Position numbers and translations under genes: made by a program. Positions 16,700 through 47,908 of a stretch of 64,000 bases of DNA are shown here, in pieces. The first letter of the stretch is position 1; every line of letters starts with the position of its first letter. The stretch covers positions 62,001 through 126,000 of IMG/VR virus record IMGVR_UViG_3300035703_000005; one strand, given 5' to 3'. The notes beneath the pieces were generated by a model. The model ran no database searches, was not told where the DNA came from, and saw only the letters and a program-made list of their open reading frames with translations.

Positions 16700-16820
16700 T
16701 AAAAGGGTAAGTATAAGTCCAGGGGGTTCTGGATGTTACAGTATTCCCCACAACACCCTCCATTGTGGGTATGAGAGACGTAATTTATACACCCTAGAGG
16801 TCTCGGTTTACGGGGTGTTA
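16700..16820 (-). ncRNA. structured psbA leader, PhotoRC-II-like
   Basis: AAACCGAGACC...CGTCTCTCATA plus paired segments upstream of psbA; recognised from memory. Confidence 0.6.
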
Positions 16821-16904
16821 CAAAGATTAAGAATTATGAGGAATCCTTAACATTTGTTTACCTATTTATCATACCACTGCTATAAAACCCTGTCAAGAGC
16901 CCCC

Positions 16905-34567: not shown

Positions 34568-34571
34568 GTAA

Positions 34572-34645
34572 CTCAGGCTCGCCACTTGTTTTGAGTACGA
34601 GAAAACAAGAAACTCGGCGGGGTTTCCCCATCCACACCAGTCGGC
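34572..34645 (-). ncRNA. wcaG RNA motif-like element
   Basis: Two UGGYG motifs (CUGGUGUGG; GUGGCGAG), GGGG-AAA-CCCC and CUUGUUUU/AAAACAAG stems, upstream of a sugar epimerase. Confidence 0.65.
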
Positions 34646-34696
34646 ATATTTAATGTCCAATCCGACGAGGACAAAATGGGTCATTGACTCCACCAC

Positions 34697-37841: not shown

Positions 37842-38876
37842 CTATCTAACGTGATGTCCACCGAACATGTATCGCATACCATTTAAAATTTTGGCTGCGA
37901 AAGTGCCCAGATTGCGTGAATTAAATCTTTCATAAAGCGCAGTGGTGATGACAGGAGCGGGAACCCCCAGGTCCACAGCGGCAGTAACTGTCCAGCGACC
38001 CTCACCGCTGTCGGATACACCTCCAGAGAATTGTTTAAGCTCAGTATTGCCGCGTAACACATCAGCAGTAAGATCCAATAACCAAGAACCAACAACGCTA
38101 CCACGACGCCATAACTCAGCCACCTCAGCAACGTCAATATCATAACAGTAACTTTCTGGGTCTGCCATTGGGGCAACCTCTGCATCCCCTTCCCTAACAT
38201 ACTTGGCACCTGCATTGGCATTTTTTAGGATATTGAATCCTTCTGCATATGCTTGCATTATACCATACTCAATTCCATTATGAACCATCTTTACGAAATG
38301 TCCTGCACCAGGTCCGCCACAATGCAACCAGCCATACTCTGCAGAAGTTATGTCTGAGTCAAATTGAGTCCTGGGGGCAGCGTCGATTCCTGGAGAGAGG
38401 GCATTAAAAATACGCGAACAAGTGGCGACTGCAGTATCTCCGCCACCAACCATAAGACAGTATCCACGATCCAAACCATAAACACCGCCGCTAGTGCCGC
38501 AATCAATATATTGGATACCCATCTTTGCCAAACGTTCTGATCTTTTCCTACTGTCTTTAAAATTGCTATTGCCATGATCAATAATAATATCTCCTTCACC
38601 ACAAAATCGTAGTAACTCATTGATAGTCTCCTCTACTGTTTCTGCAGGTACAACCATTTGGAAAATTCCTGGTTGTGTTCCTCCTTTATTATTCTGTTTA
38701 ACTACTTTAACAAGATTTTCAATAGTAGTTGCAACTCCATTAATATATCCCTTTTCATAAGCTTCTTGAGCCTTTTCATAATTTCTCCTATAACCCCAAA
38801 CTTCTATTCCTGATTTCATCATACGACGGGACATTCCTTCTCCCATCCTTCCAAGTCCAATTAATCCTACTTTCAT
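37842..38876 (-). CDS. gnd: 6-phosphogluconate dehydrogenase (short type)
   Basis: GLGRMG, GTSGG, GHFVKMVHNGIEY, DSGEGRW, FGGH. Confidence 0.96.
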   Translation of the reverse strand: MKVGLIGLGRMGEGMSRRMMKSGIEVWGYRRNYEKAQEAYEKGYINGVATTIENLVKVVKQNNKGGTQPGIFQMVVPAETVEETINELLRFCGEGDIIIDHGNSNFKDSRKRSERLAKMGIQYIDCGTSGGVYGLDRGYCLMVGGGDTAVATCSRIFNALSPGIDAAPRTQFDSDITSAEYGWLHCGGPGAGHFVKMVHNGIEYGIMQAYAEGFNILKNANAGAKYVREGDAEVAPMADPESYCYDIDVAEVAELWRRGSVVGSWLLDLTADVLRGNTELKQFSGGVSDSGEGRWTVTAAVDLGVPAPVITTALYERFNSRNLGTFAAKILNGMRYMFGGHHVR

Positions 38877-39079: not shown

Positions 39080-39739
39080 TCATTTTTGATCTTTCATAAC
39101 TTGTTCCCAGTCCTTCTGGAATAACTCAAGACCCTTATCAGTCATAATGTTCTTATACATTGACCAAAATACAATGGGAGGAATTGTAACTACATCTGCA
39201 CCACAAAGAGCAGACTGTTCTACCTGTCTTACATCACGAAGAGATGCTGCAAGAATTTGTGTAGATGTTCCCGAATAATCAAATGCTTTACGAATGTTCT
39301 TAATGAGTTCGATTCCATCAATCGAATTATCCATCCAACGACCAACAAAAGGTGAAATGAATGTTGCTCCTGATTTAGATGCAAGAATTGCCTGAGCGAC
39401 TGAGAATACAAGAGTTACATTGACTTGAATTCCTTTATCAGTCAAAAATTTACAAGCCTTAAGTCCTTCTACTGTACAAGGAACTTTAATTGTAACTGCT
39501 GGTGCAATTGTATAAAATTGTTGTGCTTGTGAAAGCATTTCTTCTGCAGTATCGGCAACAACTTCTGCAGAAATACTTTCTAGTTTTGAAAAAGACTTTG
39601 ATATTTCTTCGATAACTTCATGAAGTTGTCTACCACTTTTAAGAATTAAAGTGGGATTTGTAGTAACTCCATCCAATAGTCCAGTCTCGTATGCTGGACT
39701 AATCATTGAAACATCTGCGGTATCTAAAAAAATCTTCAT
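39080..39739 (-). CDS. talC: transaldolase (TalC/Fsa type)
   Basis: FLDTA, GVTTNPT, IKVP, SPFVGR. Confidence 0.95.
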   Translation of the reverse strand: MKIFLDTADVSMISPAYETGLLDGVTTNPTLILKSGRQLHEVIEEISKSFSKLESISAEVVADTAEEMLSQAQQFYTIAPAVTIKVPCTVEGLKACKFLTDKGIQVNVTLVFSVAQAILASKSGATFISPFVGRWMDNSIDGIELIKNIRKAFDYSGTSTQILAASLRDVRQVEQSALCGADVVTIPPIVFWSMYKNIMTDKGLELFQKDWEQVMKDQK

Positions 39740-41115: not shown

Positions 41116-41637
41116 TTAATCTTCAGTTGTTTCTTCTACTTGAATTTCAGATTCTTCTTGTTCTTCAATTTCTTGAACTTCTTCTTTTGCGAGTCCAGGA
41201 GAGGATTCAAGATACGATCTCAACATCCAAACAAATTTTCCATGAGACTCATTTAGATCATCTATAAGATTTGAAGTTGCTCTGGACTTCTGAGCATCAG
41301 CTTCCTCAGCAACTTCAGTAAATAGATCACACAAATCTTGATTTGATTTTAACAGATCTCTTACCATTTTATGGCAATCTGTTGTACTTTGTCCAGTTTT
41401 GACTTTGGAAACTTCTACAATTCTTTCTAAACTATTAAGTGGTTTTACATTTAGAAACCTCATGTGTTCAGAGATACGATCGATCTCCTCAAACATTGTT
41501 TCATACTGATCACCAAAAAGAGTATGAAGTTGTGGAAAATCTTCTCCAATTACATTCCAATGATACGCCCATGTCTTATGAAATAAGACAAATAGGGATG
41601 CTTGTGCATCACTTAGTAGTTTAAAAAGTGTTTCCAT
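41116..41637 (-). CDS. dps: Dps mini-ferritin with an acidic tail
   Basis: HWNV.G.DF..LH..F...Y...D..SE, K.VWML; late promoter at 41658-41665. Confidence 0.92.
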   Translation of the reverse strand: METLFKLLSDAQASLFVLFHKTWAYHWNVIGEDFPQLHTLFGDQYETMFEEIDRISEHMRFLNVKPLNSLERIVEVSKVKTGQSTTDCHKMVRDLLKSNQDLCDLFTEVAEEADAQKSRATSNLIDDLNESHGKFVWMLRSYLESSPGLAKEEVQEIEEQEESEIQVEETTED

Positions 41638-41667: not shown

Positions 41668-41739
41668 TGGGCAATATCGGATTCGAACCAATGACCAACT
41701 GCGTGTAAAGCAGCTGCGCTACCGCTGCGCTAATCGCCC
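41668..41739 (-). tRNA. tRNA-Val(TAC)
   Basis: Cloverleaf. Confidence 0.93.
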
Positions 41740-41740
41740 G

Positions 41741-41948
41741 TGGGGGTGGTGAGATTCTGTCATACTCACAATCGGGAAGGTTACACTGACAACGTATTTC
41801 CCAACACTTAGGTTCTTCTTGGTGAGAAGTTCTATACCTTTGATTTCTCAACGATACAGCGGGCACCACCCCTAACCTATTACATTATCCCGTGAGTAAC
41901 CACAAGGATTGTTCTGTCACACCCAGAGAACTCCCGTCGAAGTTCTCA
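41741..41948 (-). ncRNA. multi-stem structured RNA, possibly the manA motif
   Basis: GGGGUGGUG/CACCACCCC closing stem, internal stems, repeated UGACAGAA, ACUCAC/GUGAGU complement. Confidence 0.55.
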
Positions 41949-42462: not shown

Positions 42463-42537
42463 TGGTGGCGGGGGGTGGAATTGAACCACCTACCTGAAGC
42501 TTATGAGACTTCTGTGCAACCGTTACACTTCCCCACT
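42463..42537 (-). tRNA. tRNA-Met(CAT), initiator-like
   Basis: A1xC72 mismatch, encoded CCA. Confidence 0.85.
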
Positions 42538-42540
42538 ATA

Positions 42541-42776
42541 AGGCCGCTTTTCACGGCACCGTAACACTTTCTTTACAGGGCTGTTATCACCCCGTCTCTC
42601 TATACTAGGGCAGTAGTCTTACTGCGAGAGAATGCAACAATGTTGTTTGCGTTTGTTTTTTGTCCCGTCAACAGATACAACCTTACCACCTCGTCGAAAC
42701 CTTGGCAACCCCTAGTTATGGAGTTGTGGGGAGTCGAACCCCAGTCCGAAGCAACAGACTTTGCATCCTCTTGAAC
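42541..42776 (-). ncRNA. ssrA: two-piece (circularly permuted) tmRNA
   Basis: Acceptor piece ends GGACTGGGGTTCGACTCCCCACAACTCCA at 42719; 6-nt spacer; coding piece starts GGGGTTG...GGTTTCGAC at 42712; tag ANNIVAFSRSKTTALV* at 42600-42650. Confidence 0.92.
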
Positions 42777-42783
42777 ATAGTAT

Positions 42784-42812
42784 ATAGTATACTAAAATTA
42801 TTCAGTTGTCAA
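42784..42812 (-). promoter_or_regulatory. sigma70-type promoter of the tmRNA
   Basis: TTGACA-N17-TACTAT. Confidence 0.7.
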
Positions 42813-42813
42813 G

Positions 42814-42900
42814 CGGAGAGAGAGGGATTTGAACCCTCGGTGAAGTTACCCCCACACAGACTTTCCAGGTCTGCTCCTTAAGCCACTCGGACACCTCTCC
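42814..42900 (-). tRNA. tRNA-Ser(GGA)
   Basis: Class II cloverleaf. Confidence 0.93.
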
Positions 42901-43167: not shown

Positions 43168-43839
43168 CTATAAGATTCCGAAAAGTTTACATCTTTTACG
43201 AATAGCATTATCAGAAACTCCAAACATTTTACCAATAGAAACTAAAGAATAAGAAGCAAGAAGTTTTTGAAGTTCTTCTTTAGATACTTCAAATTTTCTT
43301 TTTCTTGGAATTGAAATTCTAGGTTTTTTAACCCTTTTTACATTCCTACCAGCAAATGTATCAGTTTGACTATTGCAGTTTGGACATAAAAATCTTAGAT
43401 TTTCTAATCTATTATCATTAGGAATTCCATTTATATGATCTAAAACCATAGATAAAGGATTTCCATTCCATTTAGGTTCCAATCCACAATTGAAGCAAGA
43501 ATAAGAAATAATATTTTCTTGTATTAGTCTTGCCCTAATAACACTCCTAGAAGTGCTACTATTTTCAACAAATAGTATATTATTTGGAATTTTATTTTTA
43601 CTAGGACCAAATTTTTTTCCTTTATTGGAATCAAGTCCTTTTTTTATATGAGAAGTATCAATTTTTTCATATTCTATTCTTCTTTTTAGTGTGTTTATAT
43701 TAGAACCTTGAGAAAATATATTAAGTTTTCTCAAAATCTCAGAATAAGAAGAACTATCAGAAACAATTAATTCTAGTTGTTTTTTTGGAACAGACCATAA
43801 GATACTTCTTTTTTTTCTGGATTTATTTTGATTTGACAT
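43168..43839 (-). mobile_element. free-standing HNH endonuclease inside the tRNA array
   Basis: CFNC...LDHINGIPNDNRLENLRFLCPNC; late promoter at 43860-43867. Confidence 0.9.
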
Positions 43840-44413: not shown

Positions 44414-44426
44414 ATATCGTAGGTGT

Positions 44427-44509
44427 ATCATTTGAGAGGATTCGAACCTCCATTGCCGCCTCCAAAACGCAAGTGCTATGGCGGAGTGTTACCGTTACAC
44501 TACAAATGA
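44427..44509 (-). ncRNA. tRNA-like RNA (Gln-like body) with a 19-nt anticodon loop
   Basis: Intact acceptor, D and T arms; CCGCC-N19-GGCGG. Confidence 0.7.
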
Positions 44510-44725
44510 TATCCTTACGTTGCTTACTCCTAGATTCTACTCATCAGATTTACTTGTTGGACCTAATCGTTGGAATACTCGCTGCGTTCAACTTATTACC
44601 CTGTCTCGACTTGAACGAGACTGTTTTCTATAGCCTTTGCGTTTGTTAGTAATAAGCATACTGACAGGTTTCTTTTACCTTTCAGTTTTCCGTTCAACCC
44701 AACTTTGGAATAAAGTTTGGGCAAG

Positions 44726-45444: not shown

Positions 45445-45534
45445 GAGAGAGGAGGGAATTGAACCCCCGATGGTTCTTATGTACGTGTTTTACAGACACG
45501 GACTACACATATTGCCGACAGTAGCCACTCTCCC
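45445..45534 (-). tRNA. tRNA-Tyr(GTA) with an enlarged D arm
   Basis: CGTGT-CTGTAAA-ACACG; long variable region. Confidence 0.8.
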
Positions 45535-45929
45535 TAGATTTTATACTGCAAATAATTTTCACCAAGATTGATTGAGTTTTTATTATCTTTTATGATGTCT
45601 TTGGGAATAAGATACTTATCACCATCAGCAGTTAGTATGAATAACTGGTCATAAAAGATTTCAGTATTGAGTTTATTGACAAAATTAGATTTACTATTTC
45701 CACCAGTAATCCTCAATCCCACTACATATTTTCCACTAGAAGATTTGGAGTTAGTTGTCTTTACTTGTATTTTTTGTAATCCAAGTTCAGGAAACTCAAC
45801 AATCAAATCGTAATCTTGACTATCTGTTAATGGGATAGAAACAGTATATCCAAGACCACAAAAGTGGGCAATACAAATACCCAATCCAACATCACCTTGT
45901 TTCTTGGTGTTTTTGCAGTTATGGAACAT
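45534..45929 (-). mobile_element. free-standing PD-(D/E)XK endonuclease (group I intron-associated type)
   Basis: KKQGD.G...VSIPLTD...YDLIV...KIQVKT; late promoter at 45955-45962. Confidence 0.85.
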
Positions 45930-47470: not shown

Positions 47471-47908
47471 TCAATGAGCTGATGTTCCATGAAAGTAATC
47501 CTTCCTGTAGTAACGACCGAGTACATTGCTATTGTAGTACCGAGGTTCCCCAGTGTCAAGGGCCTCTGTCAGGACATTATTTAGGAACAACTGACGGGTC
47601 TCCTCATAATTCGTTTTACCTACAGTATCGTGTAGAGAAATTATGAATCTTCTGAACTTATCTTTTCCGTATTTCTTAATATCATCTTTGAGTTCTGGAC
47701 AGGATCCGTAATACTTTTTCCAATCAGACTCCTGTTTAGATCTTCGAGTTGCACCCTTTTTCTTTCGGAAGCTCCAGAAATACTTTCTCCCAAAGTAACT
47801 CCGATTATTTTCAAGGCAGTCAATACGATAAACAAAACCAAAATGATCCTGAATATGATCTGACTCAAAAACCTCTCCATTATAAGTCCAAGGGTTTTCA
47901 TAGCTCAT
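47471..47908 (-). CDS. GIY-YIG endonuclease (T4 endonuclease II-like)
   Basis: GFVYRI...YFGRK...ESDWKKYYGS...YYN. Confidence 0.8.
   Translation of the reverse strand: MSYENPWTYNGEVFESDHIQDHFGFVYRIDCLENNRSYFGRKYFWSFRKKKGATRRSKQESDWKKYYGSCPELKDDIKKYGKDKFRRFIISLHDTVGKTNYEETRQLFLNNVLTEALDTGEPRYYNSNVLGRYYRKDYFHGTSAH

What the first reader, a model, noticed from the sequence alone, without database searches (positions are those of the whole stretch)
42541..42776. Phage two-piece tmRNA whose tag ends in -ALV instead of -AA
Seen: a permuted gene with a 6-nt intervening segment, G3.U70, its own promoter and the tag ANNIVAFSRSKTTALV*. Known: two-piece tmRNA occurs in picocyanobacteria, cyanobacterial tags begin ANNIV and end in AA, and the terminal AA is the ClpX determinant. 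Inference: the phage tmRNA rescues ribosomes while changing or weakening degradation of tagged proteins. It also points to a Synechococcus/Cyanobium-type host.
Basis: partly seen in the sequence, partly recalled or inferred. Interest (0 to 1): 0.65.

Follow-up and report, generated by a model that had tools for sequence, protein, structure and literature searches.

The report
Cyanophage tmRNA with valine-ending tag
A giant cyanophage carries its own intact ribosome-rescue RNA (two-piece tmRNA) whose peptide tag ends in Ala-Leu-Val, an ending kept by selection across a whole clade of cyanophages, whereas none of 138 host-type tmRNAs read here ends in Val and 137 end in Ala-Ala; so phage-tagged proteins probably meet a different proteolytic fate.

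Summary
ARAGORN and Rfam both call a permuted cyanobacterial-type tmRNA at 42,5xx-42,8xx on the minus strand. It has the acceptor stem GGGGUUG/CAACUCC with G3·U70, a 6-nt spacer, a TTGACA-17-TACTAT promoter and the tag ANNIVAFSRSKTTALV*.

The -ALV ending is not an error or a one-off. Independent IMG/VR contigs whose flanks are only 70-86% identical to the window carry -ALV, -SLV, -TLV or -FLV tags. These use four Leu codons, three Val codons and two different stop codons. Variable sites in the tag are biased to the third codon position (6/3/14) and pN/pS is 0.32.

Among 80 unique cyanophage tmRNAs, only 20 end in AA; the rest end mostly in LV, AV or TA. Among 138 unique Cyanobiaceae host tmRNAs, 137 end in AA and none ends in Val.

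The RNA fold shows strong covariation. The phage encodes no SmpB, Clp, FtsH, PDZ or CCA-adding enzyme, so the RNA must work through host factors.

Phage two-piece tmRNAs are already known. The conserved, phage-specific change of the tag's C-terminal signal appears undescribed. Its effect on degradation (weaker, re-routed or equivalent) is inferred, not shown.

The parts
42807..42812 (-). -35 hexamer TTGACA of the promoter directly upstream of the tmRNA. It starts 1 nt after the 3' end of tRNA-Ser.
   Evidence: Consensus scan, 10 of 12 matches. The hexamer is conserved while the spacer varies in the ALV clade, S-CAM1/3 and AG-345-P14.
42784..42789 (-). -10 hexamer TACTAT, 17 nt after the -35 hexamer.
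42719..42776 (-). Acceptor piece (3' tRNA-like half). It holds the leader strand of the long inter-piece helix (42768-42747), the T-arm (42743-42727), the acceptor 3' strand CAACUCC (42726-42720) and discriminator A73 (42719). The start at about 42776 is inferred from the promoter.
   Evidence: Sequence; Rfam alignment; covariation in A2.
42713..42718 (-). Intervening segment UAACUA between A73 and G1. It would be removed during processing, with CCA added afterwards (inferred).
   Evidence: Sequence. The segment varies in sequence and length among relatives.
42538..42712 (-). Coding piece. It holds the acceptor 5' strand GGGGUUG (42712-42706), the GGUUUCGAC D-loop-like motif, the 3' strand of the inter-piece helix (42693-42673), the tag ORF, downstream helices and the 3' hairpin.
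42600..42650 (-). Tag reading frame GCA...GTA TAG, encoding ANNIVAFSRSKTTALV followed by a stop.
   Evidence: ARAGORN coding part 159-209; sequence; codon-level conservation.
42543..42557 (-). 3'-terminal hairpin GCCG-UGAAAAG-CGGC, with no U-run after it. tRNA-Met begins 5 nt downstream.
   Evidence: helix 9, compensatory GC/CG changes.
42813..42900 (-). Upstream neighbour tRNA-Ser(GGA), which has its own stronger promoter-like site at 42937-42910.
42463..42537 (-). Downstream neighbour tRNA-Met(CAU). RNase P cleavage at its 5' end would set the 3' end of the tmRNA precursor (inferred).

Best explanation
This is a functional, phage-encoded two-piece tmRNA of the cyanobacterial lineage, sitting inside the phage's 28-gene tRNA array.

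Proposed pathway:
1. It is transcribed from a sigma-70-type promoter.
2. Host tRNA-processing enzymes cut it into an acceptor piece and a coding piece. RNase P would cut at G1 and at the next tRNA, with 3' trimming and CCA addition.
3. Host AlaRS charges it with alanine through G3·U70.
4. Host SmpB delivers it to stalled ribosomes. This keeps trans-translation running while the phage shuts down and degrades the host genome.
5. It appends ANNIVAFSRSKTTALV.

The front of the tag (ANNIV.FSR) is like the host's. The C-terminal signal is a phage-specific x-Leu-Val in place of the host's near-invariant Val-Ala-Ala. Selection on the peptide itself maintains this ending across a large cyanophage clade.

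The likeliest consequence is that rescue is kept while recognition of the tagged products by host ClpXP-type proteolysis is lowered or altered.

Shown here: the gene anatomy, the fold covariation, coding selection on the tag, and the phage/host contrast.
Inferred: processing, charging, SmpB use and the effect on proteolysis.

My sub-confidences are about 0.9 that it is a functional tmRNA, about 0.9 that -ALV is real and selected, and about 0.45 that degradation is weakened or re-routed. The overall figure of 0.55 is for the whole statement, including the proteolysis part.
For: Gene calls: ARAGORN and two Rfam models above their cut-offs.

Fold (17 diverse cyanophage tmRNAs):
- 45 pairs, with 96.1% of cells paired against 44-53% when the partners are slid.
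- 19 pairs show compensatory changes, against 2-6 in the slid controls.
- The U·G at the 3:70 position is invariant in 17 of 17.

Conservation: the tmRNA stretch is 93-97% identical to syntenic IMG/VR relatives whose flanking genes are 76-87% identical. A second -SLV clade is syntenic with flanks at 70-74%.

Tag coding:
- x-L-V is written with CTA/CTT/TTG/TTA, GTA/GTT/GTG and TAG/TGA.
- Variable sites by codon position are 6/3/14, and pN/pS is 0.32.

Phage versus host:
- Phage: 80 unique cyanophage tmRNAs end in TA 23, AA 20, LV 19, AV 10, TV 4 and others 4.
- Host: 137 of 138 unique host tmRNAs end in AA and none in V.
- 72 of 77 non-cyano-type phage tmRNAs from the same scan end in AA.

Tree with the tag end masked: the window sits in a well-supported clade of 22 sequences, 19 of them Val-ended.

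Promoter: the hexamers are conserved while the spacer varies.

Dependence on the host: no SmpB, ClpP, S41, PDZ, Clp ATPase, FtsH, CCA-adding enzyme or RF-1/ArfB family is found in the 248,835-bp genome, which CheckV rates 100% complete.

Precedent: the last three ssrA residues are the critical ClpX signal, and variants ending in Val (AAV, ASV) are weaker degrons in E. coli and Synechocystis (PMC9382460; PMC2860132).
Against: There is no expression, processing, charging or tagging data.

Ala to Val (GCN to GTN) and Ala to Thr (GCN to ACN) are single transitions towards A+T. In an AT-richer phage they could spread under merely relaxed constraint. The A/V ending changed at least five times on the phage tree, which suggests the two states are not far apart in fitness.

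Val-ended ssrA variants are still degraded in model systems, so the effect could be small.

ClpX specificity in picocyanobacteria has not been measured.

The closest cultured relatives, S-SRM01 and S-SCSM2R, have no tmRNA, so the gene is dispensable for this kind of phage.
Confidence: 0.55

Rival explanations
1. The tag is an equivalent degron. Only a small aliphatic C-terminal residue is required. Val (or Thr-Ala) ends are tolerated variants that spread through AT-biased mutation under somewhat relaxed selection in phages. Under this view, tagged proteins are degraded much as with the host tag.
For: All 53 distinct phage tags end in A, V or (once) L, which are all hydrophobic. A and V interchanged at least 5 times on the tree. 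The changes from the host codons are single transitions. AAV and ASV tags are still degraded in Synechocystis (PMC2860132).
Against: Hosts hold AA almost without exception (137 of 138), so the two endings are not equivalent for the cell. Alpha-type phage tmRNAs keep AA (72 of 77). Within the clade, Leu-Val is held through many synonymous changes and a change of stop codon, which points to a specific optimum rather than drift.
Confidence: 0.27
2. The tag re-routes products. The x-Leu-Val end directs tagged products to a different host protease, such as FtsH or the PDZ-domain proteases of the Ctp/Deg type that read hydrophobic C-termini, instead of ClpXP.
For: There is specific conservation of S/T/A-L-V and V-A-V ends. 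Tsp and HtrA PDZ domains are reported to bind the ssrA peptide (Spiers 2002 and Keiler 1996, as cited in PMC8909930). The phage itself encodes no protease or PDZ protein.
Against: No direct evidence. Ctp and Deg proteases act mainly outside the cytoplasm. This rival is hard to separate from the main explanation without experiments.
Confidence: 0.1
3. The tag copies a host. Under this view the -ALV end copies the tmRNA tag of an unsampled natural host lineage.
For: Phage tmRNAs derive ultimately from cyanobacterial ones, and the front of the tag is host-like.
Against: Among 145 host loci drawn evenly across the family, none ends in V. Host tmRNAs form one clade with 100/100 support that excludes the Val-ended phage sequences.
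Confidence: 0.04
4. The RNA is a decoy. Under this view it titrates SmpB or ribosomes and so blocks host trans-translation, and the tag is irrelevant.
For: A phage tRNA-like-domain-only tmRNA (DS6A) was proposed to act this way (PMC4131195).
Against: The full mRNA-like domain is present and shows coding-type selection. The resume region and the stop codon are conserved.
Confidence: 0.03
5. The gene is an artefact or a relic. Under this view -ALV is an assembly frameshift of an ancestral ...TA* tag, or the gene is a decaying host fragment.
For: In the window, ACU GCC C UAG looks like a +1 C relative to the ACU GCC UAA of AG-345-P14.
Against: Ten or more independent contigs from different metagenomes carry -ALV with synonymous differences and even TGA in place of TAG. 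There is also strong covariation, and the gene is better conserved than its flanks.
Confidence: 0.01

Closest known systems
Two-piece (circularly permuted) tmRNA of picocyanobacteria (Rfam RF01851 cyano_tmRNA; Prochlorococcus, Synechococcus, Cyanobium)
   Same: The gene order is permuted in the same way. It shares the G3·U70 acceptor stem, the T-arm, the GGUUUCGAC motif, the long helix joining the two pieces, the lack of an encoded CCA, and a tag that starts ANNIV/ANKIV..F.R.
   Different: It scores about 106 bits where host genes score 280-326 and lies outside the host clade. It lacks the host's 5' leader hairpin and part of the post-tag helix. Position 6 of the tag is Ala, not Arg or Ser. 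The end is -ALV, not -VAA.
tmRNAs of the cultured cyanophages S-CAM1/S-CAM3, S-CRM01 and the single-cell virus AG-345-P14
   Same: They have the same architecture and belong to the same phage-side group in the tree. In the marine ones the promoter hexamers are also the same.
   Different: Their tag ends are -TVAA (S-CAM1/3), -LVAAL (S-CRM01) and -LATA (AG-345-P14). S-CAM and AG-345 tags carry a 7-residue N-terminal extension. In the records read here the gene is unannotated or overlaid by a 'hypothetical protein' CDS.
Two-piece tmRNAs of marine pelagiphages and the methylophage Melnitz (Buchholz et al. 2022, PMC9004378)
   Same: These are phage-encoded permuted tmRNAs near early promoters, proposed to sustain the hijacked translation machinery.
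   Different: They are of the alphaproteobacterial type with tags such as ANDE.FALAA. 72 of 77 such tags in my scan keep the AA end. Some are coupled to a glutamine riboswitch.
One-piece tmRNAs of cluster C mycobacteriophages (Bxz1 and relatives) and Bacillus phage G (Hudson et al. 2014, PMC4131195)
   Same: These are large lytic phages with many tRNAs plus a tmRNA.
   Different: They are one-piece, from an unrelated lineage. DS6A retains only the tRNA-like domain.
Engineered ssrA tag variants AAV, ASV and LVA (Andersen 1998, as reviewed in PMC9382460; tested in Synechocystis in PMC2860132)
   Same: These tags differ only in the last three residues, and some end in Val. They show graded protein stability in E. 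coli and in a cyanobacterium.
   Different: They are laboratory constructs on the E. coli tag. The exact -ALV end and the cyanobacterial tag body have not been tested.

Membership tests
Two-piece cyanobacterial-type tmRNA (RF01851 / RF04321) | Score above the curated Rfam cut-offs | tested here: met
   105.8 bits against 70, and 78.3 bits against 47.
Two-piece cyanobacterial-type tmRNA (RF01851 / RF04321) | Permuted gene order: T-arm and acceptor 3' strand upstream of the acceptor 5' strand and the coding region, separated by a short spacer | tested here: met
   ARAGORN reports 'tmRNA*'. Sequence coordinates come, and the spacer is 6 nt.
Two-piece cyanobacterial-type tmRNA (RF01851 / RF04321) | 7-bp acceptor stem with the G3·U70 alanine identity pair and discriminator A73 | tested here: met
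   GGGGUUG/CAACUCC plus A. The U·G pair is invariant in 17 of 17 relatives.
Two-piece cyanobacterial-type tmRNA (RF01851 / RF04321) | Conserved secondary structure supported by covariation: T-arm, inter-piece helix and downstream helices | tested here: met
   96.1% of cells paired; 19 compensatory pairs against 2-6 in the slid controls.
Two-piece cyanobacterial-type tmRNA (RF01851 / RF04321) | Tag frame that resumes on an Ala codon, is translated, and ends at a stop codon | tested here: met
   The frame runs GCA...TAG. Third-position bias is 6/3/14 and pN/pS is 0.32.
Two-piece cyanobacterial-type tmRNA (RF01851 / RF04321) | Tag ends in the Ala-Ala proteolysis signal | tested here: not met
   The window's tag ends in -ALV. 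Hosts end in AA in 137 of 138 cases. This is a functional hallmark of tmRNA tags rather than part of the RNA family definition.
Two-piece cyanobacterial-type tmRNA (RF01851 / RF04321) | Processing into two base-paired RNAs, CCA addition, alanylation and SmpB binding | not testable with these tools
   Inferred from the anatomy. The phage lacks its own SmpB and CCA-adding enzyme.
Val-ended cyanophage tmRNA clade (defined here) | Placement in the well-supported clade when the tag end is masked, together with a tag ending x-L-V or x-A-V | tested here: met
   The clade has 22 rows at 99/83 support, 19 of them Val-ended. The window is 97% identical to L297.
Sigma-70-type promoter | -35 and -10 hexamers at 17-nt spacing, conserved across relatives while the spacer varies | tested here: met
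   Promoter activity itself was not tested.

The most novel reading that the evidence does not exclude
Cyanophages have repeatedly rewritten the C-terminal degradation signal of their own tmRNA (to -LV, -AV or -TA) while keeping ribosome rescue. This would uncouple rescue from host ClpXP proteolysis, or hand tagged proteins to another pathway. If so, it is a previously unrecognised way for a virus to reprogram host protein quality control.
Probability: 0.35. Interest if true: 0.75.

Novelty: new variant of a known kind. Interest (0 to 1): 0.55.

Why it matters
tmRNA tags are textbook degradation signals, and their Ala-Ala end is almost universal. Here a whole group of viruses that infect globally important picocyanobacteria keeps the rescue RNA but holds a different tag end under selection, while their hosts almost never deviate.

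This gives a natural experiment on what the tag end is for. It also gives a concrete hypothesis about how phages manage stalled ribosomes and truncated proteins during long infections. A practical by-product is a set of natural cyanobacterial tag variants that could serve as tunable degrons.

It also shows that tmRNA genes are routinely missed, or annotated as hypothetical proteins, in cyanophage records.

Tried and rejected
- Recent +1 insertion or assembly error. I first suspected -ALV was one of these (ACU GCC C UAG against the ACU GCC UAA of AG-345-P14). I rejected this: the ending is ancient and is encoded in many synonymous ways.
There is no read support or transcript-end evidence.
- Phage-encoded partners. 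SmpB, ClpP, S41 peptidase, PDZ_2, AAA_2 (Clp ATPases), FtsH M41, CCA-adding enzyme and RF-1/ArfB were all absent from the phage genome. The neighbouring ORFs are gnd, talC, a Dps-like ferritin and homing endonucleases, with no protease or adaptor.
- Closest isolates. S-SRM01 and S-SCSM2R have no tmRNA above the cut-off.
Hosts were reached through a genome contigs pattern scan and a family-level search instead.
- Papers. The primary papers on two-piece tmRNA (Gaudin 2002; Sharkady and Williams 2004; the tmRNA website 2004) are not held. My recollection that some plastid tmRNA tags also end in -AV or -FA therefore could not be checked and is only a lead.
- Trees. The first tree had long-branch warnings. 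The second tree omits eight rows that my trimming pattern failed on: L311, L313, L314, L328, L329, L337, L364 and L382. These are mostly the QTALV group.
- Second tmRNA-like hits in three host genomes. These are degenerate copies with no ARAGORN call.
- Sampling. The IMG/VR scans were capped at about 118 rows, so the counts describe a sample, not prevalence. None of the search patterns included the tag end.
- Tools not used. The large protein searches, structure prediction and complex prediction were not needed.

Full report
**What is there**

The window is part of a 248,835-bp IMG/VR cyanomyovirus record (JGI 3300035703, Ga0310140_0000077), which CheckV rates 100% complete. On the minus strand between about 36 and 46.5 kb lie 28 tRNA genes. 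Among them ARAGORN calls one permuted tmRNA at 42509-42808 with the tag ANNIVAFSRSKTTALV*. Rfam's cyano_tmRNA model matches 42543-42798 at 105.8 bits (cut-off 70), and the general permuted-tmRNA model scores 78.3 bits (cut-off 47).

Reading the strand directly gives, in order:
- TTGACA (42812-42807), then 17 nt, then TACTAT (42789-42784).
- A leader that forms one strand of a long helix.
- The T-arm (42743-42727).
- The acceptor 3' strand CAACUCC and discriminator A (42726-42719).
- A 6-nt spacer UAACUA.
- The acceptor 5' strand GGGGUUG (42712-42706), which gives G3·U70.
- The GGUUUCGAC motif.
- The tag frame, from GCA at 42650 to GTA at 42603, with TAG at 42602-42600.
- Two further helices and a terminal hairpin (42557-42543).
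- tRNA-Met, starting 5 nt later.

CCA is not encoded. The promoter-like site is one of five in a 1-kb stretch where shuffles give 0.8.

**Is it a working gene?**

Seventeen diverse cyanophage tmRNAs align into a common fold of 45 pairs. Of the cells, 96.1% are paired, against 44-53% when the partners are slid by 1-3 columns. Nineteen pairs carry compensatory changes, against 2-6 in the controls. The U·G at acceptor position 3:70 never varies.

Syntenic IMG/VR relatives have flanking genes 76-87% identical to the window but a tmRNA stretch 93-97% identical. The two promoter hexamers are conserved while the spacer between them changes freely. In some relatives a tRNA abuts the gene instead, so those copies are probably co-transcribed with the tRNAs.

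The phage has no SmpB, CCA-adding enzyme or RF-1/ArfB-type factor. The RNA must therefore use host SmpB, AlaRS, RNase P and the CCA-adding enzyme. This part is inference from anatomy.

**Is -ALV real?**

My first thought was a +1 C in a CCC run, because AG-345-P14 reads ACU GCC UAA where the window reads ACU GCC CUA GUA UAG. That idea fails.

Three pattern scans of IMG/VR, none of which specified the tag end, followed by ARAGORN, gave 106 loci. These comprise 80 unique cyanobacterial-type phage tmRNAs and 53 distinct tags.

Tags ending x-Leu-Val occur on many contigs from different metagenomes. Examples are ...SKSTALV...SNTTALV...RQTALV...SVPSLV...KVATLV and ...QIFLV. They are written with four Leu codons (CTA, CTT, TTG, TTA), three Val codons (GTA, GTT, GTG) and either TAG or TGA.

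Among ten distinct 16-residue LV tags, variable sites fall 6/3/14 on codon positions 1/2/3, and pN/pS is 0.32. So the frame is read, and the peptide, including its last two residues, is under purifying selection.

**Phage against host**

- Cyanobiaceae genomes: 145 loci were read, 138 of them unique. They came from a genome-contig scan and an evenly drawn family-level search in which 129 of 151 genomes matched above the cut-off. Of the unique sequences, 137 end in AA (135 in VAA), one ends in VLA and none ends in Val.
- Cyanophage tmRNAs: the 80 unique sequences end in TA (23), AA (20), LV (19), AV (10), TV (4) and AL, PA, SV or CA (1 each).
- Other phage tmRNAs: in the first scan, 72 of 77 tmRNAs not of the cyanobacterial type, mostly the alphaproteobacterial two-piece kind, keep AA.

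**Tree**

Host tmRNAs form one clade with 100/100 support, and the phage sequences lie outside it. With the last four codons and the stop masked, the window falls in a well-supported clade (99/83) of 22 sequences. Nineteen of these end in Val. S-CRM01 (-VAAL) and two Ala-ended sequences are nested inside, and an -APVAA phage sequence is sister to the clade.

Over the whole phage set, the A/V state needs at least five changes. Eight rows were left out of that tree, as listed under Tried and rejected. tmRNA is short and several branches are long, so the deeper order is uncertain.

**How it most likely works**

The backbone is ordinary trans-translation run on host factors. The RNA is supplied by the phage from what looks like an early-type promoter inside its tRNA array. 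This would keep rescue capacity up once host transcription fails.

What differs is the tag. The front half (ANNIV.FSR) stays host-like. The C-terminal signal is replaced.

The last three residues of ssrA are the critical ClpX signal. Variants ending in Val (AAV, ASV) give more stable proteins than LVA or LAA in E. coli, and in the same order in Synechocystis (PMC9382460; PMC2860132). So a weaker or altered ClpXP signal is the most economical reading.

The phage encodes no Clp, FtsH, S41 or PDZ protein of its own. Any effect therefore runs through host proteases.

The main rival is that Ala to Val and Ala to Thr are single AT-ward transitions, tolerated under relaxed constraint, and that the tag is a near-equivalent degron. 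The repeated A/V switches favour this view. The strict host invariance and the deep, synonymous-change-rich conservation of Leu-Val argue against it. Re-routing to FtsH or PDZ proteases cannot be separated from the main reading without experiments.

**Comparison with what is known**

Phage two-piece tmRNAs have been described. Buchholz et al. 2022 counted 53 among 18,146 phage genomes, nearly all aquatic, and placed cyanophage sequences with the cyanobacterial lineage. An earlier census listed only mycobacteriophages and Bacillus phage G.

S-CAM1/3, S-CRM01 and AG-345-P14 carry relatives of the present gene. In the records read here these copies are unannotated or covered by a 'hypothetical protein' CDS.

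I found no paper in the held library that analyses the tag ends of cyanophage tmRNAs. That is a statement about the library, not proof of novelty.

The gene is a member of the two-piece cyanobacterial-type tmRNA family by every structural criterion tested. It departs from the functional hallmark of an Ala-Ala tag end.

**Host**

The tmRNA type is the permuted form found here throughout the Cyanobiaceae. The nearest cultured phages infect Synechococcus: S-SRM01 from a freshwater reservoir and S-SCSM2R from the South China Sea.

The source metagenome number lies close to that of a Lake Mendota data set named in one record title. This hints at fresh water but is unverified.

The tmRNA itself cannot pin the host more finely, because phage tmRNAs have long evolved apart from host ones.

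**Verdict**

Its biochemical meaning is open and directly testable.

Noticed in passing
window 41739-41946 (-): A manA RNA motif (109.3 bits) sits between tRNA-Val and tRNA-Gly inside the tRNA array. A wcaG RNA lies at 34571-34674 (-) and a PhotoRC-II RNA at 16733-16830 (-).
   Followed up: no
window 44425-44510 (-): A tRNA-like gene for which ARAGORN cannot name an anticodon (Rfam tRNA, 49.2 bits). About 19 nt lie between the two strands of the anticodon stem. The array otherwise lacks only tRNA-Tyr.
   Followed up: partly
window 43168-43839 (-), 45534-45929 (-), 47471-47908 (-): Three homing-endonuclease-type genes (HNH, PD-(D/E)XK and SegE-like GIY-YIG) are interspersed in or beside the tRNA array. 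A Dps-like ferritin gene lies at 41116-41637, talC at 39080-39739 and gnd at 37842-38876.
   Followed up: partly
L109, L281, L298, L305 (IMG/VR contigs of the -SLV clade), upstream of the tmRNA: In place of the TTGACA/TACTAT promoter, these relatives have CTATAAATA just upstream. This resembles a T4-type late promoter, so the timing of tmRNA expression may differ between clades. Their 3' domain is also shorter and ends in a terminator-like hairpin followed by a U-run.
   Followed up: no
L001/L002 (S-CAM1/3), L004 (AG-345-P14) and many marine IMG/VR loci: Marine cyanophage tags carry a 7-residue extension (A[NK]TSD[ST]A) before ANNIV. A subgroup has a further insertion (..LTREFARTSELATA). Whether translation resumes at the first or the second Ala codon is not settled.
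   Followed up: no
G018:C8:15487-15781 (L397), G011:C11:308429-308665 (L398), G041:C1:926930-927148 (L399): Three host genomes hold a second, degenerate tmRNA-like copy (168, 94 and 66 bits). One lies 3 kb from the real gene. ARAGORN gives no proper call for any of them. They may be remnants of island integration at the tmRNA gene.
   Followed up: partly
NC_031906.1 (S-CAM3) 183003-183143, and the KU686192-KU686199 records: The tmRNA region of the S-CAM phages is annotated as a 'hypothetical protein' CDS. In S-CAM1 (HQ634177) and S-CRM01 it is not annotated at all.
   Followed up: no
MW015081.1 (S-SRM01) and PQ898602.1 (S-SCSM2R), whole records: The two closest cultured relatives of the window's phage, both about 240 kb, have no tmRNA above the Rfam cut-off. 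Another 250.6-kb IMG/VR phage (L296/G155) has an S-CAM-type -TVAA tmRNA. The gene is therefore patchy, and its type is not fixed among large cyanomyoviruses.
   Followed up: partly
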